Virus record (IMG/VR): IMGVR_UViG_3300032770_000001
Coordinates: 372,001-436,000 of that record
Strand: one strand, 5' to 3'
Length of the DNA: 64,000 nucleotides
In this document: one piece after another, positions 4,197-59,563 of the stretch
Layout: each line of letters begins with the position of its first letter
Position numbering within the stretch: position 1 is the stretch's first letter
Notes under the pieces: generated by a model
Told to the model about the DNA's origin: nothing
What the model saw: the letters and a program-made list of their open reading frames with translations, nothing else
The model's database searches: none
Made by a program: the position numbers and the translations under genes

Positions 4197-5342
4197 TTAG
4201 TTGCCCATCACGATGTAGTTGAAGGTCACGGTTCCCGAAACACCGGAACTGGTGTTCACTTGGAAACCGTTTGTGGTGATGTTGTCTACCCAGTACGAAA
4301 CAATCGGCGAAATGTTGCTTGTGGGTACGATCACCACGACAGGTGCGGAACCATACGGCGTGTTGAAAGTGACCGTGTTCGATGTGCCTACAGTGATTGA
4401 GACCGTTCCGGCAATGTCCGTGTTAACCTTGAGATGACCAGCAGGATCGACAGCAAAGCTTGGTGCAACCGCCGAAATGCCCCATGCTTCGAAGGCGTTG
4501 TGCGTACCTGCGCCAGCCGTCAGCTTCGCAACCAAGGCTGGTTGATCTGCTGGCTGCATGATGAGCATTGCAGGTCCGGTAGCGGTTGTTAGAGTCTGGG
4601 TCGTGATAGCGCCGTTCGGGTCAATCCAGAAGTAGCCATCACCATTCTGCGTTTGAATAATAGCGTTGCTGTTCGTTCCGTCGCCGTAAACAATCAGAGA
4701 GGCTGCAATGCTTTCGCTTGGAGTGAAAGTTCCAATAGCGCCGGACGGCTTGATACGAATTGCTTCACTGTTAGTGTCCGTGCTGTAGACCGGAACAAGG
4801 CTGGAGAGCAGTGTGCCGCTGTCCTGAACGTTGCCGTTTGTGTCGTAGGTAAGCACATCGCCGGAGACAATTGTCTGTCCTGTGTTAGTCAACTGAACTG
4901 CGTTGCCGTTGCCGACTTTGGAGTTGATCTGGGAAACCGCCAGCGAACCTGCAAGCTGGTTGAAGTTATAGTCGTTGGTTGCCGCAACGACCACGCCAGA
5001 GCGACCGAACACCGACGTAACGCCGGAAGAGATAGTGCCCGGTGCCCATGCGGTACCGTTCCATTCAATCACTTGATTGATGGTCGCGCCTGACTGAGTG
5101 ATCTGAGAAAGGTTGATGCTAGAAACAGCAGCAGCCGGAGTTGACCAGCCGAGGGTGATGATCGAGTTGTTCGGACCGGAAAGGTTCTGAACAGTCATCA
5201 CTTGACCGACGCCGACCGGAACGGAATTCGGCAACCAGATTGTGGTGCCGCCGCCGATGGGCTGCGAACCGAGAGAGGTCGTACCGGACGAGAATCCCTG
5301 AAATACGACTACACCGTTAACCGGAAGATTTTGCTGTGCCAT
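4197..5342 (-). CDS. Tail/head fibre-like virion protein
   Basis: G/S/T/N-rich; GVTSVFGRSG fibre motif; C-terminal VTFNTPYGSAPVVV (H-lectin/gp53-like) domain. Confidence 0.65.
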   Translation of the reverse strand: MAQQNLPVNGVVVFQGFSSGTTSLGSQPIGGGTTIWLPNSVPVGVGQVMTVQNLSGPNNSIITLGWSTPAAAVSSINLSQITQSGATINQVIEWNGTAWAPGTISSGVTSVFGRSGVVVAATNDYNFNQLAGSLAVSQINSKVGNGNAVQLTNTGQTIVSGDVLTYDTNGNVQDSGTLLSSLVPVYSTDTNSEAIRIKPSGAIGTFTPSESIAASLIVYGDGTNSNAIIQTQNGDGYFWIDPNGAITTQTLTTATGPAMLIMQPADQPALVAKLTAGAGTHNAFEAWGISAVAPSFAVDPAGHLKVNTDIAGTVSITVGTSNTVTFNTPYGSAPVVVIVPTSNISPIVSYWVDNITTNGFQVNTSSGVSGTVTFNYIVMGN

Positions 5343-11451: not shown

Positions 11452-13557
11452 TTACCGCATTCTTTTGCCGCCCATTTTTCGGACCCAACGTGGGTCTGAA
11501 CGGCGTCCTGCGCCGGGGATTCCCGGCGTTCCCATACCCGGCACCCCGCCGCCCATGCGCTGCATACGCTCGCGAAGACGGAGTTCCGCCATGCTGACAC
11601 CCTCAGTGGAAATCAGGCGTCCGGCACCACGGGCTGCCTGCTGTTGAACCACGAGCGAACGGCCTGTCGGGTCGAGTCGCAGGTTGCCCTGTTCGATGAG
11701 CCATTTCTGAGCGAGCAGAGCCACAAGCTGAGTCGCGTCCACCATGTCGTCATGGGCTCCCTTTTCAATCGGGGCGTGCACGCGGATGCGATACTTGGAT
11801 ATGACATCGGTTTCCACCATCTTGATTTCATCCACGTATTTCTGGATGTCGGGGAAGAAGGCGGTTTTGTCGTTGATGAAACCACGGAGAGCATACGCCA
11901 TCTCCGAGTTGATCGCCGGGGTCAGGTTCACAAGCTCCATGCCGCGAATGTCGTTCTGTTCGAGCAGGGCGATAAGCTGACGACCTGCGTGTTGGTCGCA
12001 GACACCTTGGTAGCATGGCAACTGTTTGTTCATGTAGTTCAGCCATACGAGCACGTCACCCAGCGGCAGAACTTGGAAGTCTACGTATTTCTTCTTACCT
12101 TCCGGATCAGGTTTGACGCCCGGACCTATGAATTCTTCGCCGCAGATCATGCGGTCGATGTAGTCATAAACGAGCACGATACCGTGGTTGACGCCTTGAA
12201 CTTCAGGACGCTGACGGAACTCAAGGTGACCGATAGCCAGAGCGGTAGCGTCAGACGCGGTCGAATTCGGATCGGTGACGTTGATGCCGCCAAGGTCAAG
12301 ACCCCAGAAGTATTGGCGTCCCAACTGCTCAAGGCTGAATCGGGTAAGATTCTTACGACCGGGATCGATACATGCACGCACGTCCACTTCGCGGACATAC
12401 GATTCGGACGATTCCAAGAATTGTCCGCCGTATTCGGCCTTGAAAGTCAATGGGTTCTTACGGTGCTTGTCACGCAAGAAGCCCGGTTTGAGGGCTGGGT
12501 TCATTTCCGCTGATGAACAGGCAAGCACGAACGTGGGGTTGTCGTCGTTGACGCCATCTTGCAATGCCATCTTGTAAAGGTCGTACATCATACCGACCTT
12601 CTTGAGAGGCGAGGAGATCGACAGAATCATCGAGTCCTGATATTGAACTTTCTGGGTGACTCGCTTACCGTTCTCATCGAGAACCGGATTCCCATTCTCA
12701 TCTTCAGCATCGACAGTTTCGTAGTGATGGAAATCACCAGCAGCCGGGGTTGCGGCGACGTACATGTCTTCTGACGTTGAACCTTTTTCGGAACGGAAGT
12801 GAGCGAACTCGTCCAATGCTAGGAAGACCGATGAAGGGCCGCGCACGGCGTTGGTGGTGCAAGGCAGTGACCACACAACGACCGATGGCTTAGCGTCTTT
12901 GCGATCTTGATCGGCACGCGAACGGAACGTCAGGCTCTTTGAGTTGTTGTCTTTCAGGTAACCATTGAACCACTGCGCACGGTTGACGGCAGCCGAGAGT
13001 TTCTTGAACAAACGTCCGGCTCCGGTTTCGTCCTGAGCAAGGAAAGTGAAATCAATCTGTGAGCCATCTGCCATGCCGAAGTGCTGCTGCGGCGAGTAGA
13101 TATTGAGAAGCAGGTAGAGGCGGTACGCGGCGATGGCGGCGACAAGTTCAGATTTACCACCACGGCGACCGCAGAATATGACGCCTTCGTTGAAGCCACG
13201 AGCCGGGATGTCCCGCCAGTCGTCGATGTTGCAGCGACCCTCTTCGTAGCAGATATGCAGGTATTCTTCTTCCGTGACTGTGCGAATGAGTTGGTCACGG
13301 AAAGTGTTCCACATGGGCACCATGCCCCATGGGGTGCCGTCCGGTTGCTTGATAGTGTCCGCCCAGTACGGCTTATAGTCGAAGGGAACCGCACACAGAG
13401 CCTTGAGGATCACTCGCTGAACGGGGCGCAGAATAATGCCCGTGCCGCCCGGTCCTTCGACGAAGTCGATGGCGTTCAGCTTATGTGTTGGGTCATCGAT
13501 ATGGTCGAGCGTCAGATCGGCTACGACCGACTTATTCTTACCACGTTGAATCGGCAT
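11452..13557 (-). CDS. terL: Terminase large subunit
   Basis: LRPVQ adenine-binding motif, Walker A CGRRGGKS, Walker B LALDE, coupling ISSP, nuclease GLDLG and HDDMVDA. Confidence 0.92.
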   Translation of the reverse strand: MPIQRGKNKSVVADLTLDHIDDPTHKLNAIDFVEGPGGTGIILRPVQRVILKALCAVPFDYKPYWADTIKQPDGTPWGMVPMWNTFRDQLIRTVTEEEYLHICYEEGRCNIDDWRDIPARGFNEGVIFCGRRGGKSELVAAIAAYRLYLLLNIYSPQQHFGMADGSQIDFTFLAQDETGAGRLFKKLSAAVNRAQWFNGYLKDNNSKSLTFRSRADQDRKDAKPSVVVWSLPCTTNAVRGPSSVFLALDEFAHFRSEKGSTSEDMYVAATPAAGDFHHYETVDAEDENGNPVLDENGKRVTQKVQYQDSMILSISSPLKKVGMMYDLYKMALQDGVNDDNPTFVLACSSAEMNPALKPGFLRDKHRKNPLTFKAEYGGQFLESSESYVREVDVRACIDPGRKNLTRFSLEQLGRQYFWGLDLGGINVTDPNSTASDATALAIGHLEFRQRPEVQGVNHGIVLVYDYIDRMICGEEFIGPGVKPDPEGKKKYVDFQVLPLGDVLVWLNYMNKQLPCYQGVCDQHAGRQLIALLEQNDIRGMELVNLTPAINSEMAYALRGFINDKTAFFPDIQKYVDEIKMVETDVISKYRIRVHAPIEKGAHDDMVDATQLVALLAQKWLIEQGNLRLDPTGRSLVVQQQAARGAGRLISTEGVSMAELRLRERMQRMGGGVPGMGTPGIPGAGRRSDPRWVRKMGGKRMR

Positions 13558-13602: not shown

Positions 13603-13640
13603 AAAAGCTGGGGGCGACAGATGCGTAGTCTGTCGCCCCT
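13603..13640 (-). terminator. Strong hairpin / terminator
   Basis: GGGGCGACAGA/TCTGTCGCCCC 11-bp stem followed by CAGCTTTT. Confidence 0.6.
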
Positions 13641-13697: not shown

Positions 13698-13803
13698 TGG
13701 AGACCCGGACGGGAGTTGAACCCGCAACCACCCGGTTAACACCGGGTGCTCTGTTGAGGTCTGGGTTAGGGCCAGCCGCTCTGCCTGATTGAGCTACCGG
13801 GTC
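13698..13803 (-). tRNA. Atypical tRNA-like gene with two anticodon-like arms (nominal CUA and GUU)
   Basis: Perfect acceptor stem GACCCGG/CCGGGTC-T-CCA, D arm GCTC/GAGC, T arm GCGGG-TTCAACT-CCCGT; 106 nt. Confidence 0.75.
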
Positions 13804-13809
13804 GTTTTC

Positions 13810-13971
13810 CTAATCACCCTCAGTATCTCGCGTGTACTCGATTGAGTCAATAATGAGCACGCCTTCGGTATCGCGATGACAGCGAGCGGTAACACCGTAA
13901 TCGCCTTTCGGATCGCCGAGGTCAAGTCCCCAGAAATACGTTGTCGCGAGACCTTGATTCTGAGTGTCCAT
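13810..13971 (-). CDS. 53-aa mini-protein resembling the start of the TerL nuclease domain (not in ORF track)
   Basis: MDTQNQGLATTYFWGLDLGDPKGDYGVTARCHRDTEGVLIIDSIEYTRDTEGD; YFWGLDLG is identical in TerL; GGAG RBS. Confidence 0.65.
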   Translation of the reverse strand: MDTQNQGLATTYFWGLDLGDPKGDYGVTARCHRDTEGVLIIDSIEYTRDTEGD

Positions 13972-14030
13972 CACAGCCACTCCGTGCCCACGACTTCTTC
14001 ACCACCGCCCATGTTGACCCCCCTGATTAG

Positions 14031-14228
14031 CTAATACTGTGGTAGGCGTCTGATGCCAGCCCGAACTATTGTGACGCGCCCCTGACCCTCACCTTCTTGA
14101 GTCCCCGGAGCTTCCAGCCATTCGTCCCACTCGTCGCCCTCGTAGTCGATCTGATCGAGCATACCCTTCCAATCCTCGCGGATCAGGACACGGGTTTGTG
14201 CCTTCGATTTGATCTTGATCTTTGCCAA
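14031..14228 (-). CDS. Hypothetical protein
   Basis: TTG start just after the 1051-aa gene; ends in TAG. Confidence 0.5.
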   Translation of the reverse strand: MAKIKIKSKAQTRVLIREDWKGMLDQIDYEGDEWDEWLEAPGTQEGEGQGRVTIVRAGIRRLPQY

Positions 14229-17200: not shown

Positions 17201-17387
17201 ACGGGCTGGGAATTTCTGGAATGCGCTTAATGCGCTTGCCCGTATCCTGCAAGGTATCCATGTAGCGGCTCAAGCCAACGTGTGACGTGATGCGCTTGAT
17301 GCGCTTCGCCGGGAGTTCGCCTTCAGCTTTCTTCTCGTACTCCCCGACCTTTGCGTATTCTTTCAGAGCTTCGATGTTAATTGGCAT
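14232..17387 (-). CDS. Large acidic multi-module protein (putative internal head polyprotein)
   Basis: Modules separated by KKA/KVA/KTA/KEA; includes a YNGWSNWLTW module. Confidence 0.7.
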   Translation of the reverse strand: MPINIEALKEYAKVGEYEKKAEGELPAKRIKRITSHVGLSRYMDTLQDTGKRIKRIPEIPSPYAYSPDHLLYLTPEGQQVFIVETRHKTYDVFLVPPDAKQYASEEELFEDMKNQPKQGAKKSAAAIIQSDNDLGEKMEAVMDNIAQKQEQIADQPGGVQEKQEFTENTHEEAGVPVTDGDIKHTERPNVTAIKDAIEGQAEMEIGKPIDQKQEEVEAAKDKAEAGGSSVSIPAGKGVTININVTAKNKVAYVSKCPGHRNSKGELAEWCIKQHDTDKILESFKSEGAAKEGLKNMESHKHGATDAENPNDTRHIDTAPIGGEHGDKNTLQPAGGPFGGVDLNGHPPNFEKHSEVSPTRPLTCVIRDEMGTVEEAGHVNTTAEAAQWFQERGINIYSEVEGKDDGKDTVFTFKRGSAHIAFTLQGKVRIAHFSTKKAAADFEKKAKAKFGSKIALCKKADYNGWSNWLTWHVALLIDNTEASYNTKINLTRNALKKGMTPAELGNQFARFFKKQEKETRDFAAANAEDARSERGQYEREQLEGGAPKPTQEQLQSMSREQKVKYYGDQFKGLFYDIGGTSSWEEELGDLDWEEIATSAMDEERLQNPDAYPQTSKADDKMLKDMGIKMNSLKTAAKPMPAKGSPEWHQLKIAIKTLQMPDAMVGVMGGPDKATSRSILAEYGIDPAKYEGSPLKTSAKDTNGKTVGYCKTQGHWNMHEKGTNCKEWQEKPHTETEGKKAGEGAAKSPEDIEKEAGFNLFFPGQVVKEFYPDLQHEIVDYPNATNSPMLYPDISGDAHELPSEQAIEAAVEASLDPTIVAYVSTDPAGAMGIGRDGKPQVLEGAPFRKEDEIRGPMFYDEFFMNQSTVPGKAINSIASKKATDPAADGHSKVNNRGAGQMFMEEYHANYTGGPALKAIAGKIAGADEAKQFALFLQKVCGEIAATFVAAFKVTNRPILDKVPGTGEIQLANIEQPQGLSSFNLVNTQSRVKYLLDKLTDSEVQDAINTAFAQAAVWHEGDGGGFVYEVFVRIENIDTDSMIAKYKFVCGTKE

Positions 17388-20300
17388 CGCCTTCCGTTTC
17401 CTTCTCCACTACGAAATCTGCAAGATCACCAATCCCAAGATCGATTGGACGTTCTTCATCCTCTTCGTCACCGTAAGCAGCACAGCCTTGCTTTTCAGCC
17501 AGAGTCCACGTGCTTGCGAGTTCCAACTGATTCACAAGTTCATCAGTGCTGGTGCCGGAATCAACCAGTTCACCATCCGCGTAAATTTCCCAGCCGTTGG
17601 GAGACGTATGGACAACCACGCGATTACCAGTTTCCGGACCCATGAACGTACCGGGATCGCCTTCATCAGACCAACCCATGCCGCTCAGGGCTTCAACATA
17701 CGGGAACTCCCCAGTTTCAGTCTGCGGAGCCGCTTTGACTGATGCCGCGAAATGAGCCGGGTTGACAGTGTCGGTTGAGGCCGAATCACTCGTCAAGTCC
17801 TTCTTGTCCGCGTCCACAGCTTTGCGTGCCTGAGCGAGGTCACCATCGATTGCTTCCGCCGTCTTAGACTTCTCGACGTTGGTTTTCGGAACCATCGGAT
17901 CAGCCCCACCTTTTTCATTGGATGGGTTATCGACCGTGTCCGCGACCTTCGCCGCTTCCGGAACCGACTTAGTTGGCTGCGAGATGTCCTTGTCAACCGT
18001 GTCCGGGCTGACCGTCTTGGACTTCGCTTCGGAGATGTCGCCGCTCACGTCGTCGGCAGTCTTCGCCTTCTCGTGGTCGGTCTTCACTTCCATTGCACCT
18101 GCCCCACCCGCTTCGTTTGCCGGATTGTCGGCGGTGTCAGCCTGCTTTGCATTGTACTGTTCGTGACGCTGCACGGTCGGGGACAAGTTATCGCCCTCGC
18201 CTGCACCGCCGTCACCGGAGTCTGACCCCTCAGAAACTTCGTTGTCAGCCACGTCCGCTGTTTTCTCGCTGCCCATCATCGGTTTGGTCATGTGATGAAG
18301 GGACAGATCACGCACGTCAGACTGGTCAATCGGCTTCTCGCCCGTGGTGTATCCGGACGGCCAACGGTTGTAATCATCGCGGCAGTCACCGTAGAAGTCA
18401 GGCGGGTGTGTCCCACCGCAGCTTCCACAATCGACCCAGTCATCCGGTGGATTTTCGGCATCAATTGGCGGCGGATTCGTCGCGCTGTAAGGCGCACCTG
18501 CCGTCTTTTCCTCGGAGGCGAAGTAGTTCATCTCTTCGTCGCCAAGCTCCGGCTCTTCATCTTCTGCGTAGGTGAACACGCCAGACGCCATAGCGTCTTC
18601 AGCGCAACCGTCGCAGAACGCGGTTCCAGTCACGTCATCCATGTCAACACGACGGAGAATACAGCTTGCTGGAACAAGGCACTGTGCTACGCCTTCGTGC
18701 TGTGGGCAGCCGGGATCGGTGCATTCACAGTCGCCTTCGACTTGGTAAAACCCGTCCGGAGCAGCCGTCTTTTCCTCGGATGCCATCAGGGTATCCATCT
18801 CATCGAGTGAGGATTCGATATCGAAATCGTTCTCACGCGGGTCGCGGTGAGTGTAGACCTCAGCCGTCAACGGGCTGTCAGCCGGAGTCCACGATGTGCG
18901 GCACTTACCGCATTCCCATTCGAAGCTGGATGCAGCACCGATGTGGTAAATGCGATCTTCTTCGGGCAGATCGGTACCGAACGGTTCAGAGCAATTGTCG
19001 CAGTAGTTCACGTCGTCCCACGAATAGGCGGACACGGCACCGCACTTCGGACACTCTTCAGCCGAACCGTCAGCCAGCAGCGATTCCTTAAGGCCCTGAG
19101 CATCAACTTCATAACCTTCGGAATCGACCGCAGCTTGCTTAGATTCAGCGTCGTCACTCTTCTCTTCGGAGCCGGACTCTTCCTTTTTCTCGGACTTGCC
19201 CTTCTCGCGATTCTTCGACCATTCGGACTTGGCACCACCGCCGCCCTTGTCTTCGTCTTCCTTGGTCTTCTCATTTTCGAAGTCAGATTCCTGATTCCCA
19301 GCTTCCGAGTCAGAGACCGACTTGTCGTCTTCCGGGGTATCGGATTCCCACGGCTTCTCCCACTCAGGCTTTTCGCTGCCTTCGGGAGCATCTTCACCGG
19401 GGAGAGGAACAACCGGAGCCGGACCGAACTCTTCCATGTTGTCGAAGATGTCGTCCTCGGTCATCGGGATGTCGGCGAACTTGGCACGCTGAGAGCCGTA
19501 CTTGCGCTGCATCTCTTCTTCGCGCTTCTGTGCCGCCGTCTTGGATTTCTGCGAACGCGCATCGTAAGACTCGCGGGTTGGGCCGCCAGCAATCAAACCC
19601 GCGACGATTTCAGACGCCGCGCTTTTCTTGATCGAAGCGAACTTGCCGCCCTGCTTGTTGTAGTGCTCGTATTCGGAGTGGATCAGGTTGTCGTCGCCGA
19701 CATACAGATCATCCTCACCGAACGACTTGGCGACTTCAGTGAGCTTGTCACCCAAACCGCCCCCATCCAACGCCTGACGATCCCAGAATCCTGCACCGTG
19801 ACCGTTGCGGGTCAGCCAGAAATCGTGTCCAGCTTGCTCTTCTGACGACCACTCACCGTGTCCGTCGTAGCCGGGACGCTGGTAAGCCTCGTTGAGCAGG
19901 GCTTCAGCTTTCTGTTGGAACGCCTGACAATCCTGAGACATCTTGTTGAGCGTCTCTGGAGCGATGTCGCGGATATCGTAATTGCGATCCAAAGGCTCAC
20001 CGCCACTCGGATCGGAGTTGTCATTCGAAGACCACAGGGCGGCTGTAACATAAGCCGTCGTGAAGTCATCAAGCTGCTGAGCAAGCTTCTTCATAGAGCC
20101 AGCCCACCATGCTGCTTTCTTCGACTTCTGTTTCTTGAGCGAAGATGACATCGACATCGGATTCGGCCCCCACTTGCCAGCGTCGATCTCAGCCTGATGA
20201 TCGAACGTTGCGTGATGTGCCTGATTGTCCTGACTCATGCTGGCAGCGTATTCCATCATGTGGTCTTTGTGTTTTTCGAGACCCTTCTTGTCGCCAACAC

Positions 20301-21813
20301 GGGCAGCTTCCCAAGCGGCACTTGCGGATGCGCTCAGGCTGTCTGTTTCTTGAGCGTGTAGACGCCCAACGTCTGCCTTCGGAGTAAACTCCATGCGCTT
20401 TGCTTGCTTGCGCTCTTCTTCCGGACGGCGAGGAACACCAGTCTCATCCAGAGCGATACCAATCGGTGCGCTCGTGAGTTCGACCACAGGCATGTCTTTT
20501 TCGGATGTGTAGCCTTCCTTCTCCTGATTGCCCTTTTCGGCGGCTTCGGTGCCCGGCCCAACGTTTGTGAACGGGGTCTCGTGCACTGCGGCACCGCTCT
20601 TGTTCTTCTCGCGAATCTTGGCGAAGTCGATACGCATACCAGTACCCTCGCACTGAGGGCAGTTGTCGCGCTGGACACCGGGCTTGCAAGAACAAGGCTG
20701 TCCGGTCTTCGGCTGGTATTCAGCCGTTGTAGGCATCGGCTTCACTGGGGTGCCCGGACGCGGGACGGAAGTCACCGCCTGCGGACGTGAAGATGGATCG
20801 GCGAACAGACTCATGTCCTTTGGATTGCCGGAGATTTCGTCGGTTTTATCAGCCGGACCAGCCTTCTTGACAACGTAACCCTTGTCATCGCAATAGCGGC
20901 AGCCGTCGCCCTCACACTTCGGGCACTCTTCCTGAGCCGTCTTCTGCTCGGAGGAGATACGTGGAACCTGCACGTTCTTGGTTGGAGCCTTGCCTTCCGA
21001 CGCATCCTCAACGCCCTCAGTTTCCGGCAACATGGAGTTGCGGAGTGCCTGATCGAGCGACTCGAATACGTTCATTTCCTGAGGATCGAGTTCCTGTTTG
21101 GTGACCTCGTCGGCAGTCTTGCGGGTCAGCAGAATGGTCTTCTTGAGCGAACTTTGCTTGGTCAACAGCGGGTATTCCTTCAGCGGATTCTCAGCAATCG
21201 CCGGGAAGTTCAGCTTCGGAGTGATGTTGTCCACGCTCCACTGAGTCGTATCCACATCGGTCATGATGGCGTCGAACGCCGAAGAGAGACGCGGATCGAA
21301 ATATGCGGAGAAGATCAGGTGACGAACCAAATTGGCGAGTTGGTTGTCGTCCTTGGTAAAGTGGAAGCCGATGTACTCACGCTGGTTAACCCAGTGTGGG
21401 GCGAAGATGATGAGGGCGGCGAATTTGCCGTCGCCGACACCGAACAACTCTTCCTTGATGGAATCGTAATCTGCCTGCGAATACTCGTCGAACTCGCTAT
21501 CGCCGATCTTGTGCGAGATCAGGTCGGACATTTCCTCACCGCCGTAGGTACGCACGAGGCAACCGTAAAGCAGAGAGGTCGGGAATTCAGCACCGCTCTT
21601 GCCCGTTACAGACGGAGGAATGACGTAGATGCGACCGATGGAAATGTTCTGACGGAAGCCCTTGTAGAAGGCTTCGAAGGACTGAATCGTGCCCGAATTG
21701 CGAGCTTCCTTTTCGCCAGCCTTAATTGCCTCGACAACTTTGGCGAGGAGTCCATCGTTCACCATGTAGCCTTGGAACGACTTCAATGCGATGCTGTTTC
21801 CACTGACGCCCAT
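17377..21813 (-). CDS. Large acidic multi-module protein (putative internal head polyprotein)
   Basis: Repeated (S)E(E)KTA junctions; Zn-finger modules; AGHDFWLTRNGHGAGFWDR module. Confidence 0.7.
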   Translation of the reverse strand: MGVSGNSIALKSFQGYMVNDGLLAKVVEAIKAGEKEARNSGTIQSFEAFYKGFRQNISIGRIYVIPPSVTGKSGAEFPTSLLYGCLVRTYGGEEMSDLISHKIGDSEFDEYSQADYDSIKEELFGVGDGKFAALIIFAPHWVNQREYIGFHFTKDDNQLANLVRHLIFSAYFDPRLSSAFDAIMTDVDTTQWSVDNITPKLNFPAIAENPLKEYPLLTKQSSLKKTILLTRKTADEVTKQELDPQEMNVFESLDQALRNSMLPETEGVEDASEGKAPTKNVQVPRISSEQKTAQEECPKCEGDGCRYCDDKGYVVKKAGPADKTDEISGNPKDMSLFADPSSRPQAVTSVPRPGTPVKPMPTTAEYQPKTGQPCSCKPGVQRDNCPQCEGTGMRIDFAKIREKNKSGAAVHETPFTNVGPGTEAAEKGNQEKEGYTSEKDMPVVELTSAPIGIALDETGVPRRPEEERKQAKRMEFTPKADVGRLHAQETDSLSASASAAWEAARVGDKKGLEKHKDHMMEYAASMSQDNQAHHATFDHQAEIDAGKWGPNPMSMSSSLKKQKSKKAAWWAGSMKKLAQQLDDFTTAYVTAALWSSNDNSDPSGGEPLDRNYDIRDIAPETLNKMSQDCQAFQQKAEALLNEAYQRPGYDGHGEWSSEEQAGHDFWLTRNGHGAGFWDRQALDGGGLGDKLTEVAKSFGEDDLYVGDDNLIHSEYEHYNKQGGKFASIKKSAASEIVAGLIAGGPTRESYDARSQKSKTAAQKREEEMQRKYGSQRAKFADIPMTEDDIFDNMEEFGPAPVVPLPGEDAPEGSEKPEWEKPWESDTPEDDKSVSDSEAGNQESDFENEKTKEDEDKGGGGAKSEWSKNREKGKSEKKEESGSEEKSDDAESKQAAVDSEGYEVDAQGLKESLLADGSAEECPKCGAVSAYSWDDVNYCDNCSEPFGTDLPEEDRIYHIGAASSFEWECGKCRTSWTPADSPLTAEVYTHRDPRENDFDIESSLDEMDTLMASEEKTAAPDGFYQVEGDCECTDPGCPQHEGVAQCLVPASCILRRVDMDDVTGTAFCDGCAEDAMASGVFTYAEDEEPELGDEEMNYFASEEKTAGAPYSATNPPPIDAENPPDDWVDCGSCGGTHPPDFYGDCRDDYNRWPSGYTTGEKPIDQSDVRDLSLHHMTKPMMGSEKTADVADNEVSEGSDSGDGGAGEGDNLSPTVQRHEQYNAKQADTADNPANEAGGAGAMEVKTDHEKAKTADDVSGDISEAKSKTVSPDTVDKDISQPTKSVPEAAKVADTVDNPSNEKGGADPMVPKTNVEKSKTAEAIDGDLAQARKAVDADKKDLTSDSASTDTVNPAHFAASVKAAPQTETGEFPYVEALSGMGWSDEGDPGTFMGPETGNRVVVHTSPNGWEIYADGELVDSGTSTDELVNQLELASTWTLAEKQGCAAYGDEEDEERPIDLGIGDLADFVVEKETEGDAN

Positions 21814-27726: not shown

Positions 27727-28485
27727 ATGAGTGAGAATACACCGTACTTCGACAGCATCACATCCGCCCGTGCAATGCTCCTCGATGAGGATGAAGCCCT
27801 TCATGGCGCAACCCTGCTTTCGATGGAGTCCGATCCGGAGTTTGCCCGTGAGCAGAAAACCCTTGCCTACATCCAAGACAACTTCCCATCGTTCCTGAAG
27901 TACCTGCGGGAACTGAAAAAGGAAGATCAGGAATTGCTCCTGAGCTACTACATTCTCGCCAAGACCCAGAACACGCTCGCGGTGATCCACCGCAGCACTC
28001 AAACAGTGTGCAGCTTCCGCATCCGCATGGCCCGCAAGGTGCTGGGAGCCATGATGCTCTGGAACGGCGTGCCGGACGAAACCATCATGAGTCCGATCCT
28101 TGCCAAAGCAGGACTGGAAGACGGTTTGGCTCAGGAGGATGGCACTCCGGTCGCCCTGTCCACCGTGATCGCCATGTACGCCAAGACCCGCAGCTTCCAG
28201 AAGATCGCCGAGGTCTTCAAGCTCCACCGCCCGGACATCCGCCGCGCCATGAGCCGTTCATCCAAGACCTTGATGGAGACCAAGGACCCGGAGCAGCACG
28301 CACTGGGAGCCTACATCCACAGCTTGATCGACAAGGCAAATCCCAGCGGCACCGGATTTTCCAAAAGAAAAGTCTCGAAACTCGGTAATATATATCGTAC
28401 AGACCCGGATATTCTGGGTGAGTTCCGCATCAAAGTGGATGACCCTGAGTTCGAACACATGTTTGTTTCGAGAGCTAACCGATGA
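27727..28485 (+). CDS. Double-HTH, sigma region-4-like regulator
   Basis: LKKEDQELLLSYYILAKTQNTLAVIH.STQTVCSFRIRMARKVL and RSFQKIAEVFKLHRPDIRRAM. Confidence 0.55.
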   Translation: MSENTPYFDSITSARAMLLDEDEALHGATLLSMESDPEFAREQKTLAYIQDNFPSFLKYLRELKKEDQELLLSYYILAKTQNTLAVIHRSTQTVCSFRIRMARKVLGAMMLWNGVPDETIMSPILAKAGLEDGLAQEDGTPVALSTVIAMYAKTRSFQKIAEVFKLHRPDIRRAMSRSSKTLMETKDPEQHALGAYIHSLIDKANPSGTGFSKRKVSKLGNIYRTDPDILGEFRIKVDDPEFEHMFVSRANR

Positions 28486-28754
28486 ACGATCAAGAGCTTC
28501 AGCAACATAGATTAGAGCAAGAACGCGAGGATTCGCGCAGACGGTATCGACTCGTATGCATCAAACAACTGTTGGAAAGCGAGGGCGGTCGCGACAAGTT
28601 CGCAACCTCGTTGGCGGAAGTTCTTCGTCGGAAGCCGGAGGCAACTCGCTTCGCAATAACCGAGACTAGGATTGAGGAAACGGTCGAGGCTCTCGGTAGG
28701 GAGTATGAGCAGCGTTTGCGGGATGTTTTTGAAGTTGCAAAAACGAGAATTTAG
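28482..28754 (+). CDS. Small protein resembling the MCP N-terminus
   Basis: QLLESEGGRDKFATSLAEVLRRK vs MCP QLLKTAGGRQKLAASLGPSLRRR. Confidence 0.65.
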   Translation: MNDQELQQHRLEQEREDSRRRYRLVCIKQLLESEGGRDKFATSLAEVLRRKPEATRFAITETRIEETVEALGREYEQRLRDVFEVAKTRI

Positions 28755-58603: not shown

Positions 58604-59563
58604 TTAGTTCTCGCCGTAGTTGGCGGTCGAGTTGAAGCGACCATTGACCGTAAGACGCTGCACGCCGGACGGGTTGAACACGAGGAAGCCGAGGTTCTCG
58701 AAGATCGAGAAGCCGATCTGACGGAGGTCAGGACGGTCGGCGCTCATGACCGTGAGCGGAATACGCTCTGGGATAACGCCGAGGAACTCTGCGTCCGCCA
58801 GAATGTAGATCGAGCCGTAGCCGACCTTACGCGACTGGAGGAGCGTTGCGCCCCAGAGATAGCCCATCACGCCCGTTTTCAACAGCTTGCGCTGTGTTTC
58901 GCGGTCGATGTTCTGTTGGGTCCACTTCAACAGGTCCGTGTAGTCACGGGGGTTGAAGAAGACGAACGCGACTGAGAGGTCATGACGCTGCACCTGACCA
59001 AAGCCGTCTGCCATCGAGTTGATGTCAATCGGAGCGTTGATCGGAATGTCAGGGTTGTAGACCGGATCATTCGAGTTCTTACCCGCTGCGCTGTTCGCGA
59101 CACCGTCAAACAGAACGAACACGTATCCGTCTTCGGCTGCGCCCACTTCGGCTTTCGCCAAGTTCAGTGAACGAGCAACCAAGTCGAAACGGCGCTCTTT
59201 GATCTGCGTGATCGGGATCATCGGATTGGACACGATTTCGAACGTCGGAACCGTGACGCGCTTCGGTTTTGTAACGCGGACGATGTCACCACCTTCTTCG
59301 CCGACGATGAATGCTTCGACGAAGGACGAACCCGGAGTCGAGCCAACGGTCATCGCGTTGACATCGAATTCCTTGTCGTAGATGGGCAGTGCGCCATCCG
59401 GAAGAGTTTCGACCATGAGAGCCTTGCGAGCAATGCTCATATAGTCACGGCGACGACGCAGGGACGGACCGAGCGAAGCCGCAAGCTTCTGACGCCCACC
59501 CGCCGTCTTCAAAAGTTGGCCGAGCATTTGCGTCTGCTGTTGTGTGCGAGAAAGTTGTGCCAT
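58604..59563 (-). CDS. Major capsid protein (HK97 fold)
   Basis: Position after scaffold and decoration genes, strong RBS and terminator; RRDY.SIARK...LPDGALPIYDK, FEI.SNP, GYLWGA motifs of large-phage MCPs. Confidence 0.85.
   Translation of the reverse strand: MAQLSRTQQQTQMLGQLLKTAGGRQKLAASLGPSLRRRRDYMSIARKALMVETLPDGALPIYDKEFDVNAMTVGSTPGSSFVEAFIVGEEGGDIVRVTKPKRVTVPTFEIVSNPMIPITQIKERRFDLVARSLNLAKAEVGAAEDGYVFVLFDGVANSAAGKNSNDPVYNPDIPINAPIDINSMADGFGQVQRHDLSVAFVFFNPRDYTDLLKWTQQNIDRETQRKLLKTGVMGYLWGATLLQSRKVGYGSIYILADAEFLGVIPERIPLTVMSADRPDLRQIGFSIFENLGFLVFNPSGVQRLTVNGRFNSTANYGEN

What the first reader, a model, noticed from the sequence alone, without database searches (positions are those of the whole stretch)
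13810..13971. Unannotated 53-aa peptide copying the terminase nuclease active-site strands
Seen: TYFWGLDLGDPKGDYGVTARCH...GVLIIDSIE aligns with TerL QYFWGLDLG...SDATALAIGH...GIVLVYDYID, with 8 consecutive identities that include the first catalytic Asp motif. It has a GGAG RBS and lies about 250 bp upstream of terL, separated by the odd tRNA. Known: Avs-type STAND receptors recognise terminase folds and active-site residues. Inference: a third self-mimic fragment, acting as a decoy or packaging regulator. Together with the MCP fragments it suggests a strategy of expressing pieces of the phage's own immune triggers.
Basis: partly seen in the sequence, partly recalled or inferred. Interest (0 to 1): 0.72.

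Follow-up and report, generated by a model that had tools for sequence, protein, structure and literature searches.

The report
Mini-gene copied from terminase nuclease strands
A giant soil/wetland phage carries, just upstream of its DNA-packaging enzyme, a real and conserved 53-residue gene whose core copies the first three strands of that enzyme's DNA-cutting domain. It belongs to an unnamed, fast-evolving family of small acidic proteins whose job is still unknown.

Summary
A 53-aa ORF on the minus strand (13971→13810) shares YFWGLDLG with TerL residues 416-423, and a family-versus-TerL profile comparison aligns 39 columns (95% probability, E 1.8e-8).

It is not a decayed duplicate. Between diverged copies the 34-codon core shows 19.8 synonymous against 7.2 non-synonymous differences. 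Indels stay in frame. The ATG, ribosome-binding site and stop/start coupling are conserved.

At least 27 relatives (53-144 aa) exist in metagenomes. In 9 of 11 contexts the gene lies directly upstream of terL in the same orientation, usually with an amber-suppressor tRNA(CUA) between. The invariant residues (G15, D17, H32, G37, D42) match invariant or near-invariant TerL residues. AlphaFold2 predicts only a three-stranded sheet, so it cannot be a nuclease.

The gene evolves several-fold faster than its neighbours. Alleles are exchanged between near-identical backbones, and close relatives (TerL 90-93% identical) have deleted the core. It occurs only beside TerLs that carry two loop insertions the mini-protein lacks.

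Best reading: a domesticated TerL mimic that titrates a TerL-binding partner, probably in a conflict role. Decoy versus packaging regulator is unresolved. No binding or expression data exist.

The parts
13810..13971 (-). 53-aa mini-ORF with a TerL nuclease beta1-beta3-like core, net charge -7, stop TAG.
   Evidence: called as a gene in ENA and JGI assemblies. Selection. Homology to TerL. AlphaFold2 predicts three strands at residues 11-17, 25-33 and 39-46.
13980..13983 (-). GGAG Shine-Dalgarno-like element, 8 nt upstream of the ATG. It lies inside the codons T-E-W of the upstream micro-ORF.
   Evidence: Purine-rich elements precede the ATG in all 11 relatives.
13971..14012 (-). 13-aa micro-ORF (ends GTEWL) whose TGA overlaps the mini-ORF ATG (TGATG). 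It corresponds to the N-terminal module that is fused in frame in longer family members.
   Evidence: The 15-nt indel relative to L028 is in frame.
14031..14228 (-). Conserved 65-aa ORF immediately upstream, syntenic in all relatives and not TerL-like.
   Evidence: hhalign against TerL: probability 0.2%.
13698..13803 (-). Atypical 106-nt tRNA gene with encoded CCA. Relatives have a canonical 75-78-nt tRNA(CUA) at this position. Here a 33-nt insert supplies a new CUA anticodon arm, and the old arm has a 6-nt loop.
   Evidence: ARAGORN finds nothing here.
13822..13850 (-). Sigma-70-like promoter match (TTGACT, 17-nt spacer, GATACT) inside the 3' end of the mini-ORF, placed to start transcription just upstream of the tRNA. 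Consensus match only.
13611..13639 (-). GC-rich 11-bp hairpin followed by a short U run, between the tRNA and terL (terminator-like). A different hairpin occupies the same place in L029.
   Evidence: (z -5.5).
11452..13557 (-). Large terminase (TerL), 701 aa.
   Evidence: Foldseek top hits are T4 gp17, Sf6 gp2, PhiV-1 TerL and HK97 TerL. 43% identical to the annotated TerL of Tunturi_5.
12154..12330 (-). TerL residues 410-468: nuclease strands beta1-beta3, the segment the mini-ORF copies. YFWGLDLG lies at 12289-12312. This clade carries two loop insertions here that the mini-ORF lacks.

Best explanation
Shown:
- The 53-aa ORF is a functional protein-coding gene under purifying selection.
- It belongs to an unnamed family of small acidic proteins (53-144 aa).
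- The conserved core of the family is a domesticated copy of the first three beta-strands of the RNase H-like nuclease domain of the large terminase. The copy keeps the residues that are invariant in TerL (catalytic Asp of beta1, the following Asp, His, Gly, Asp).
- It lacks the helices and strands beta4-beta5 that carry the remaining catalytic residues, so it cannot be a nuclease on its own.
- It sits in a small variable cassette (short modular ORFs, often a Zn-ribbon ORF, and an amber-suppressor tRNA) directly upstream of terL.

Inferred mechanism:
- An isolated three-stranded sheet exposes the hydrophobic faces that helices cover in TerL, so it must pair with itself or with a partner.
- I propose it acts as a molecular mimic of the TerL nuclease active-site sheet and occupies a partner that normally contacts TerL.
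- The gene is dispensable, evolves several-fold faster than its neighbours, is exchanged as alleles between nearly identical backbones, and has an indel-prone modular N-terminus. The partner is therefore more likely a conflict partner than an essential part of the phage's own packaging cycle. Candidates are a host sensor of terminase (Avs1-3 or Upx type) or the packaging machinery of a rival phage or satellite.
For: Gene reality:
- Core of 34 codons, window versus L029: 19.8 synonymous differences over 23.2 sites against 7.2 non-synonymous over 78.8 sites. The opposite strand shows the reverse pattern.
- dN/dS is below 1 in the four pairs where it could be computed; in the two with saturated dS, pN/pS is 0.24 and 0.47.
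- All indels between the window and L028 are confined to 13936-14023 and are in frame.
- ATG with a Shine-Dalgarno-like element and TAATG/TGATG stop/start coupling is conserved in most of the relatives.

Family:
- 13 hits in an exhaustive HMMER search (12 small proteins plus one unrelated 682-aa protein), then 25 in a word-indexed search.
- The nearest ESM Atlas clusters hold 59, 103 and 112 viral members, and one is auto-named as terminase-like.

TerL derivation:
-.
- The invariant family residues G15, D17, H32, G37, D42 (and near-invariant D24) match invariant or near-invariant TerL residues: D421, H444 and D465 invariant, G459 and D436 near-invariant.
- 3 of 27 members weakly hit a TerL PHROG.
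- The predicted strands match TerL strands 416-421, 439-447 and 458-464.

Synteny:
- Directly upstream of terL in the window, L028, L033, L035, L037, L041, L042, L043 and L044.

Accessory and fast-evolving:
- TerL is 90-93% identical between phages with the gene (L041, L043) and without it (L003, L007, L008). The core was removed by deletion.
- Mini-ORF dN/dS is 0.12-0.6, against 0.05-0.10 for TerL.
- On L035-like backbones the neighbouring ORF is 91-99% identical while the mini-ORF alleles are only 47-60% identical.

Other points:
- All members are acidic, net -1 to -14.
- The TerL nuclease domain is a documented immune target. SeAvs3 binds active-site residues and the native nuclease domain, and KpAvs2 can be triggered by the nuclease domain of some terminases (bioRxiv 10.64898/2026.04.30.721860).
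Against: - There is no evidence of binding to anything. The TerL plus mini-protein complex prediction gave no verdict.
- No transcript or peptide data exist; no RNA run was listed.
- The host and its defence repertoire are unknown.
- A three-strand fragment covers only a small part of the surface that Avs3 envelops, so decoy activity is not obvious.
- One family member (P0010, L040) lies in a replication module with no terL or tRNA nearby.
- In L039 the gene is inverted together with the tRNA, away from terL. The functional link may therefore be to the tRNA cassette rather than to TerL.
- The statistically secure part of the single-sequence similarity is mostly the beta1 motif. The beta2-beta3 alignment needs profiles.
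Confidence: 0.4

Rival explanations
1. Housekeeping regulator of the phage's own terminase. The mini-protein binds resident TerL (or the portal or DNA at the motor) and tunes nuclease or packaging activity. It would fill the slot just upstream of terL where small terminase genes usually sit.
For: The position directly upstream of terL is conserved in 9 of 11 contexts. It lies in the late-gene orientation, behind large ORFs of unknown function. It retains the TerL active-site residues. No recognisable TerS turned up next to terL in the loci examined.
Against: Phages with 90-93% identical TerL have deleted it. Alleles 47-60% identical sit on 90-99% identical backbones, so there is no sign of co-adaptation with TerL. 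It resembles short-loop TerLs rather than the resident long-loop TerL. There are no TerS features: no Pfam or PHROG TerS hit and only three strands.
Confidence: 0.2
2. The function belongs to the tRNA(CUA) cassette and the TerL resemblance is only historical. The protein would work with the neighbouring Zn-ribbon ORF and suppressor tRNA, or mainly provide a translated leader and promoter context for the tRNA. Either way it has an activity unrelated to terminase.
For: In L039 the unit of mini-ORF, Zn-ribbon ORF and tRNA is inverted as a block relative to terL. The tRNA starts 6-10 nt after the ORF's stop in the window, L035 and L044. A promoter-like site for the tRNA lies inside the ORF's 3' end. 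The family occurs only in the clade that has the tRNA(CUA) upstream of terL.
Against: A leader role would not need amino-acid conservation of TerL's invariant residues, yet synonymous sites are saturated while the peptide is kept. L042 and L040 carry the gene without a detectable tRNA. L003, L007 and L008 keep the tRNA without the core.
Confidence: 0.2
3. Non-functional remnant: a decaying partial duplication of terL, or a by-product of homing-endonuclease or intein traffic at terL, that happens to remain open.
For: terL in this group is a hotspot for mobile elements. Inteins sit at residues 109, 135/136 and 233 in relatives, and HNH, Endonuclease VII and GIY-YIG genes lie nearby. The gene has been lost in some lineages.
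Against: Strong purifying selection in the coding frame only. A family with five invariant residues across more than 25 clusters. In-frame indels. Conserved start and coupling signals. None of the inteins is at the nuclease motif. Beyond the 24-nt motif, no further DNA identity to terL was seen in the 54-nt window compared.
Confidence: 0.04
4. Chance or convergent similarity: a small beta-rich protein that merely shares a G-x-D-x-G strand motif with RNase H-like nucleases.
For: BLASTP to the phage's own TerL is only 24.6 bits, and such scores are common genome-wide. Foldseek with the 53-aa model finds nothing significant. An unrelated 682-aa repeat protein (P0011) also hit the profile.
Against: The profile-profile match extends over three strands and six conserved positions. 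The family consensus shares TerL-family-specific strings such as KQYF-G-D-G and A-GH. It is the top-ranked ORF genome-wide with a clade-independent HMM. The adjacency to terL is conserved.
Confidence: 0.04

Closest known systems
Nuclease (C-terminal, RNase H-like) domain of large terminases such as T4 gp17, Sf6 gp2 and G20c TerL
   Same: The sequence is homologous to strands beta1-beta3, including the first catalytic Asp and the conserved Asp, His and Asp that follow. It has the same predicted strand order.
   Different: Only about 40 of roughly 250 residues are present. There are no helices, no beta4-beta5 and no remaining catalytic carboxylates, so it is not an enzyme. It is a separate gene with its own start, and it is acidic and fast-evolving.
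microProteins (miPs) of plants and animals: small proteins derived from one domain of a larger protein that act as dominant-negative binders (from general knowledge, not tested here)
   Same: It is a short single-domain derivative of a multi-domain protein and is encoded as its own gene. The proposed action is titration or competition.
   Different: That class is known in eukaryotic transcription-factor families. Here the parent is a viral packaging enzyme, and no binding to the parent has been shown.
Ksap2 of phage Bas60 (PMC11564622)
   Same: It is a small phage protein of narrow distribution with a resemblance to part of a large terminase, and it is connected to terminase-sensing immunity (KpAvs2).
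Small terminase subunits, and satellite-encoded packaging-interference proteins such as SaPI Ppi or PICI Rpp (from general knowledge)
   Same: It is a small gene placed at the terminase locus that could modulate packaging.
   Different: It has no helix-turn-helix or oligomerisation domain and no similarity to TerS families. Ppi and Rpp target TerS and are not TerL fragments.

Membership tests
Large terminase nuclease domain (RNase H-like fold) | Sequence homology to the beta1 catalytic-Asp strand and to the following beta2-beta3 strands | tested here: met
   hhalign 95.4% probability, E 1.8e-8, over 39 columns. Clade-independent HMM: top of about 4,900 ORFs.
Large terminase nuclease domain (RNase H-like fold) | Complete five-stranded sheet with flanking helices and all catalytic carboxylates | tested here: not met
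   53 aa. AlphaFold2 predicts three strands only. TerL needs residues up to about 610 for the rest of the fold.
Large terminase nuclease domain (RNase H-like fold) | Recognised by curated terminase models | tested here: not met
   No Pfam hit for any of 27 members. Only 3 of 27 weakly hit a TerL PHROG, best E 0.016.
Pseudogene or decayed terL duplication | Relaxed selection (dN/dS near 1), frame disruption, and no conservation as an ORF | tested here: not met
   pN 0.09 against pS 0.85 in the core. Indels are in frame. At least 25 intact relatives.
Small terminase subunit (TerS) | Gene immediately upstream of terL | tested here: met
Small terminase subunit (TerS) | DNA-binding helix-turn-helix plus an oligomerisation helix, or a match to TerS families | tested here: not met
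   No Pfam or PHROG TerS match. The prediction is all-beta.
Anti-defence decoy of terminase-sensing receptors (Avs1-3, Upx) | Binds the sensor and blocks, or fails to trigger, its activation | not testable with these tools
   The host and its sensors are unknown. Literature shows only that the nuclease domain can be sensed. No decoy is described in the papers found.
microProtein-type dominant-negative fragment | Derived from a domain of a larger protein and encoded as a separate small gene | tested here: met
microProtein-type dominant-negative fragment | Physically engages the parent protein or its partners | tested here: inconclusive
   The single complex prediction gave no verdict. It counts neither for nor against.

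The most novel reading that the evidence does not exclude
The mini-protein is a weaponised TerL fragment. It keeps the ancestral short-loop shape of the nuclease beta1-beta3 sheet and either poisons the terminase of competing short-loop relatives or saturates a host sensor of that surface. The resident TerL escapes because it has acquired two loop insertions exactly in this segment. Where the adjacent TerL could be read, it always carries the insertions, and the gene's alleles turn over rapidly. These two facts would then be two sides of one arms race.
Probability: 0.15. Interest if true: 0.85.

Novelty: new variant of a known kind. Interest (0 to 1): 0.62.

Why it matters
Large terminase is the most conserved protein of tailed phages and a principal target of bacterial pattern-recognition immunity. 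A conserved, selected, separately encoded fragment of its active-site sheet has not, to my knowledge, been described, and the literature searches here turned up none.

If it titrates a host sensor, it would be the first decoy against terminase sensing. If it acts on terminases, it would be a phage example of microProtein-type regulation or of inter-phage interference.

Either way it gives a concrete, 53-residue, easily synthesised reagent for testing how the TerL nuclease surface is read by partners. It also flags the variable cassette between the big ORFs and terL in these jumbo phages as a hotspot for accessory genes.

Tried and rejected
- Complex prediction of full-length TerL with the mini-protein: no verdict. 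It counts neither for nor against binding.
- Foldseek of the 53-aa model against the PDB: nothing below E 0.2, as expected for three strands.
- Pfam, PHROGs on the ORF and on all 27 members: no family, only faint TerL PHROG hits.
- tBLASTn against 50,697 phage records: only chance hits.
- RNA runs: none was listed. DNA contigs of four wetland runs show only that both N-terminal alleles occur.
- Idea that DTQNQGL/NQGL is a DNA-level motif (promoter or attachment site): rejected. It occurs once in the genome, and its third codon positions vary between copies.
- Idea that the D-T-E/Q motifs are prohead-protease sites: not supported. There are 12 genome-wide hits, about the number expected by chance, and 3 of them are in this ORF.
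- Idea that an intein or intron at the nuclease motif produced the copy: the inteins of relatives sit at TerL residues 109, 135/136 and 233, not at 416-423.
- Idea that the neighbouring 65-aa ORF is another TerL piece, making a split nuclease: hhalign probability 0.2%.
- Wholesale TAG recoding: not shown. TAG ends 17% of long ORFs and table 11 gives 93% coding coverage, so no alternative code was used.
- P0011, a 682-aa repeat protein that hit the profile, is treated as unrelated.
- TerL profile against PDB sequences found no terminase. The fold search did.

Full report
**Where we are**

The window is bases 372001-436000 of a 455,708-bp IMG/VR virus record judged complete. The nearest cultured relative by TerL (43% identity) is the 309-kb Tunturiibacter phage Tunturi_5, from Acidobacteriota in tundra soil. 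Near-identical DNA occurs in wetland metagenomes.

All features discussed lie on the minus strand, in this order:

| Feature | Window coordinates |
|---|---|
| 1051-aa ORF | 17387-14232 |
| 65-aa ORF | 14228-14031 |
| 13-aa micro-ORF | 14012-13971 |
| 53-aa ORF of the finding | 13971-13810 |
| Atypical tRNA gene | 13803-13698 |
| GC-rich hairpin | 13639-13611 |
| terL, 701 aa | 13557-11452 |

**Checking the observation**

YFWGLDLG matches TerL residues 416-423 exactly. At the DNA level 21 of 24 bases agree, and the three differences are at third codon positions.

Taken alone, the BLASTP hit of 24.6 bits is not unusual. Comparing all small ORFs of the genome with all large ORFs gave about 40 hits at that level. 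I therefore tested the similarity in three other ways.

- I built an HMM of the TerL beta1-beta3 segment from relatives, leaving out the window's own clade. It ranks this ORF first among about 4,900 any-frame small ORFs of the whole genome, at 15.9-17.3 bits against 6.5 for the next best. Most of that score comes from the beta1 motif.
- After relatives of the small ORF were found, a profile-profile comparison of the small-protein family with the TerL family gave 95.4% probability and E 1.8e-8 over 39 columns. This covers TerL residues 410-468.
- AlphaFold2 predicts the small protein as three strands at residues 11-17, 25-33 and 39-46, with mean pLDDT 76.7.

The TerL model has strands at 416-421, 439-447 and 458-464, followed by the helix-strand alternation of an RNase H-like domain. 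Its best structural matches are T4 gp17, Sf6 gp2, PhiV-1 TerL (the chain bound by Avs3) and HK97 TerL.

**Is it a gene or a decaying copy?**

Two close relatives were found first: a 59-aa version on a 2.7-kb contig (L028) and a 73-aa version on a 1.2-kb contig (L029).

- Between the window and L029, the 34-codon core has 19.8 synonymous differences on 23.2 synonymous sites, which is saturation. It has only 7.2 non-synonymous differences on 78.8 sites. Reading the opposite strand reverses the pattern.
- L028 is 96.9% identical to the window over 2.7 kb. Every indel between them lies in 13936-14023, which covers the micro-ORF and the N-terminal linker of the mini-ORF. The indels are in frame: 15 nt in the micro-ORF and a net 18 nt in the mini-ORF.
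- All 12 copies with known DNA start with ATG preceded by a purine-rich element. Most overlap the stop of the preceding small ORF as TAATG or TGATG.

These are the marks of a translated, selected gene.

**A family, not a one-off**

An exhaustive HMMER search of 1.84 billion representative proteins with the three-sequence profile found 13 hits, all but one being small proteins of 53-109 aa. A second search with the enlarged alignment raised the family to 27 proteins of 53-144 aa.

Five positions are invariant: G15, D17, H32, G37 and D42. D24 and I41 are nearly so. All five invariant positions, and D24, correspond in the hhalign alignment to positions that are invariant or near-invariant in the TerL family. 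TerL D421, H444 and D465 are invariant, and G459 and D436 are near-invariant. Some members carry the TerL-family string A-I-G-H.

No Pfam family matches any member, and 3 of 27 faintly hit a TerL PHROG. The ESM Atlas places a 144-aa member next to viral clusters of 59, 103 and 112 proteins. One of these is automatically named as terminase-like, so the family is probably larger than the 27 collected here. All members are acidic, with net charge between -1 and -14.

Outside the core, the proteins are mosaics of a small vocabulary of short peptide motifs: TKIP, FRVP, KWPE, DTQNQGL, DTEG and GTEWL. Sixteen of the 27 end in NQGL. Third codon positions of these motifs differ between copies, so they are conserved as peptide rather than as DNA. 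In some phages the N-terminal module is fused to the core. In others, including the window, it is a separate micro-ORF coupled by an overlapping stop and start. L009, which lacks the core, retains a 15-aa ORF made only of the N- and C-terminal motifs.

**Genomic context**

Eleven contexts are known. In nine the gene lies directly upstream of terL in the same orientation: the window, L028, L033, L035, L037, L041, L042, L043 and L044. It sits behind a conserved ORF of about 67 aa, which in the longer contigs follows a large ORF of 800-1,200 aa. A tRNA with anticodon CUA lies between the gene and terL in most of them.

There are two exceptions.
- In L039 the block of mini-ORF, Zn-ribbon ORF and tRNA is inverted relative to its flanks.
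- In L040 a family member sits in a replication module with no terL or tRNA nearby.

**Relation to the resident TerL**

TerLs of this group come in two forms. Outgroups have short loops between beta1-beta2 and between beta2-beta3. The clade that carries the upstream tRNA(CUA) has insertions of about 9 and 8 residues there. Every TerL found next to a mini-ORF, wherever the nuclease segment lies on the contig, is of the long-loop form.

The mini-protein itself has short loops. The family HMM scores short-loop TerLs at 14-22 bits across beta1-beta2 and partly beta3. It scores long-loop TerLs, including the window's own, at only 8-13 bits on beta1 alone. The copy therefore derives from a short-loop terminase. 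That source was either the stem lineage before the insertions arose or another phage.

**Evolutionary tempo**

| Pair | Mini-ORF | Comparators |
|---|---|---|
| L033 vs L037, dN/dS | 0.36 | TerL 0.05; large upstream ORF 0.06; 68-aa neighbour 0.09 |
| L041 vs L043, dN/dS | 0.12 | TerL 0.05 |
| L035, L029, L044 (one backbone type), amino-acid identity | 47-60% | 67-aa neighbour 91-99%; TerL N-terminus 90% |

The third row shows that alleles are exchanged independently of their flanks.

L003, L007 and L008 have TerLs 90-93% identical to those of L041 and L043 but lack the core. In L008 about 330 nt have been cleanly removed, leaving the N-terminal module. In L003 and L007 the deletion is larger.

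The gene is therefore old, constrained at a handful of residues, fast-evolving elsewhere, mobile among relatives and dispensable.

**Mechanism**

What is shown is that this is a selected, TerL-derived, three-strand mini-protein that cannot be a nuclease by itself.

What is inferred is the following. In TerL both faces of this sheet are covered by helices, so in isolation the hydrophobic strand residues must be buried by self-association or by a partner. The retention of exactly the TerL-invariant polar residues suggests that the surface being presented is the active-site face. I therefore favour a mimic that occupies something which normally contacts TerL. The evolutionary tempo favours a conflict partner over an essential packaging role.

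The literature shows that the terminase nuclease domain is read by immune sensors. SeAvs3 binds active-site residues and the native nuclease domain, and KpAvs2 can be triggered by the nuclease domain of some terminases. A small phage protein with weak structural likeness to the TerL ATPase domain, Ksap2, activates KpAvs2. No terminase-fragment decoy appeared in the papers found.

I put about 0.4 on the mimic model as stated. Within it, a host-sensor partner and a rival-terminase partner are about equally likely. I put 0.2 on a housekeeping regulator of the phage's own TerL, 0.2 on a function tied to the tRNA cassette, and under 0.1 on remnant or chance.

**Limits**

- No expression data exist. 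No RNA run was listed.
- There is no binding evidence. The complex prediction returned no verdict.
- Most family members come from short contigs.
- The TerL nuclease model has only moderate confidence.
- The host is unknown.

Noticed in passing
window 13698-13803 (-): The tRNA next to the ORF is a derived form of the canonical 75-78-nt tRNA(CUA) that relatives carry at this spot. A 33-nt insert after the D-loop supplies a new stem-loop with loop CCCUAAC (anticodon CUA, C at position 33). The ancestral anticodon arm has lost a base (6-nt loop) and now sits where a long variable arm would. RNAfold gives a five-arm cloverleaf, z -3.6. ARAGORN misses it; Rfam scores it at 46.8 bits. L028 has the same form.
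   Followed up: partly
whole genome G000 and the loci with tRNA(CUA): An amber-suppressor tRNA is conserved just upstream of terL across this clade. Even so, TAG ends 17% of long ORFs, and table 11 gives 93% coding coverage. Any TAG read-through must therefore be partial or gene-specific. Mini-ORF stops are TAA in 7, TAG in 4 and TGA in 1 of the 12 copies.
   Followed up: partly
window 28482-28754 (+) versus 58604-59563 (-): A 90-aa ORF is 35% identical over 48 aa to residues 5-52 of the major head protein (phrog_2522, E 7e-42). Its conservation and selection were not tested.
   Followed up: partly
L015-L018, L022, L023, L039, L042 (terL): Relatives' terL genes are 1,063-1,572 codons long because of in-frame insertions (inteins, with a faint LAGLIDADG hit in one). 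They sit at positions equivalent to window TerL residues 109, 135/136 (inside the Walker A motif) and 233. Free-standing HNH, Endonuclease VII and GIY-YIG genes flank terL in several loci.
   Followed up: partly
L003 3328-3612, L008 3285-3596, L039 4595-4840: A Cys-rich, Zn-ribbon-like ORF of about 80-95 aa lies between the mini-ORF position and the tRNA in several relatives. It runs up to or into the tRNA gene. The window lacks it.
   Followed up: no
L039 about 4356-4950: The block of mini-ORF, Zn-ribbon ORF and tRNA(CUA) is inverted relative to both flanks when compared with L041. This is either a real inversion of the cassette or an assembly artefact.
   Followed up: partly
L040 6001-6258: A clear family member (P0010) sits in a different kind of phage contig, beside a family-A DNA polymerase, a DUF3987 protein and a ParB/methyltransferase gene. 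No terL or tRNA lies within reach, which suggests transfer of the mini-gene between phage groups.
   Followed up: no
G000 177508-177900 (+) versus 147642-150239 (+); 198085-198504 (-) versus 198508-199008 (-), outside the window: Other small ORFs of the genome resemble parts of larger ones. A 130-aa ORF is 48% identical over 50 aa to residues 610-659 of an 865-aa protein (E 1.5e-10). Two adjacent genes share an 80%-identical N-terminal 46 aa.
   Followed up: no
window 17377-21813 (-): The 1,478-aa ORF upstream of the cluster contains repeated short motifs of the form S-E-(E)-K-T-A and several Cys-x-x-Cys pairs. Neither it nor the 1,051-aa ORF (DUF7249 hit, phrog_871) has an assignable function.
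   Followed up: no
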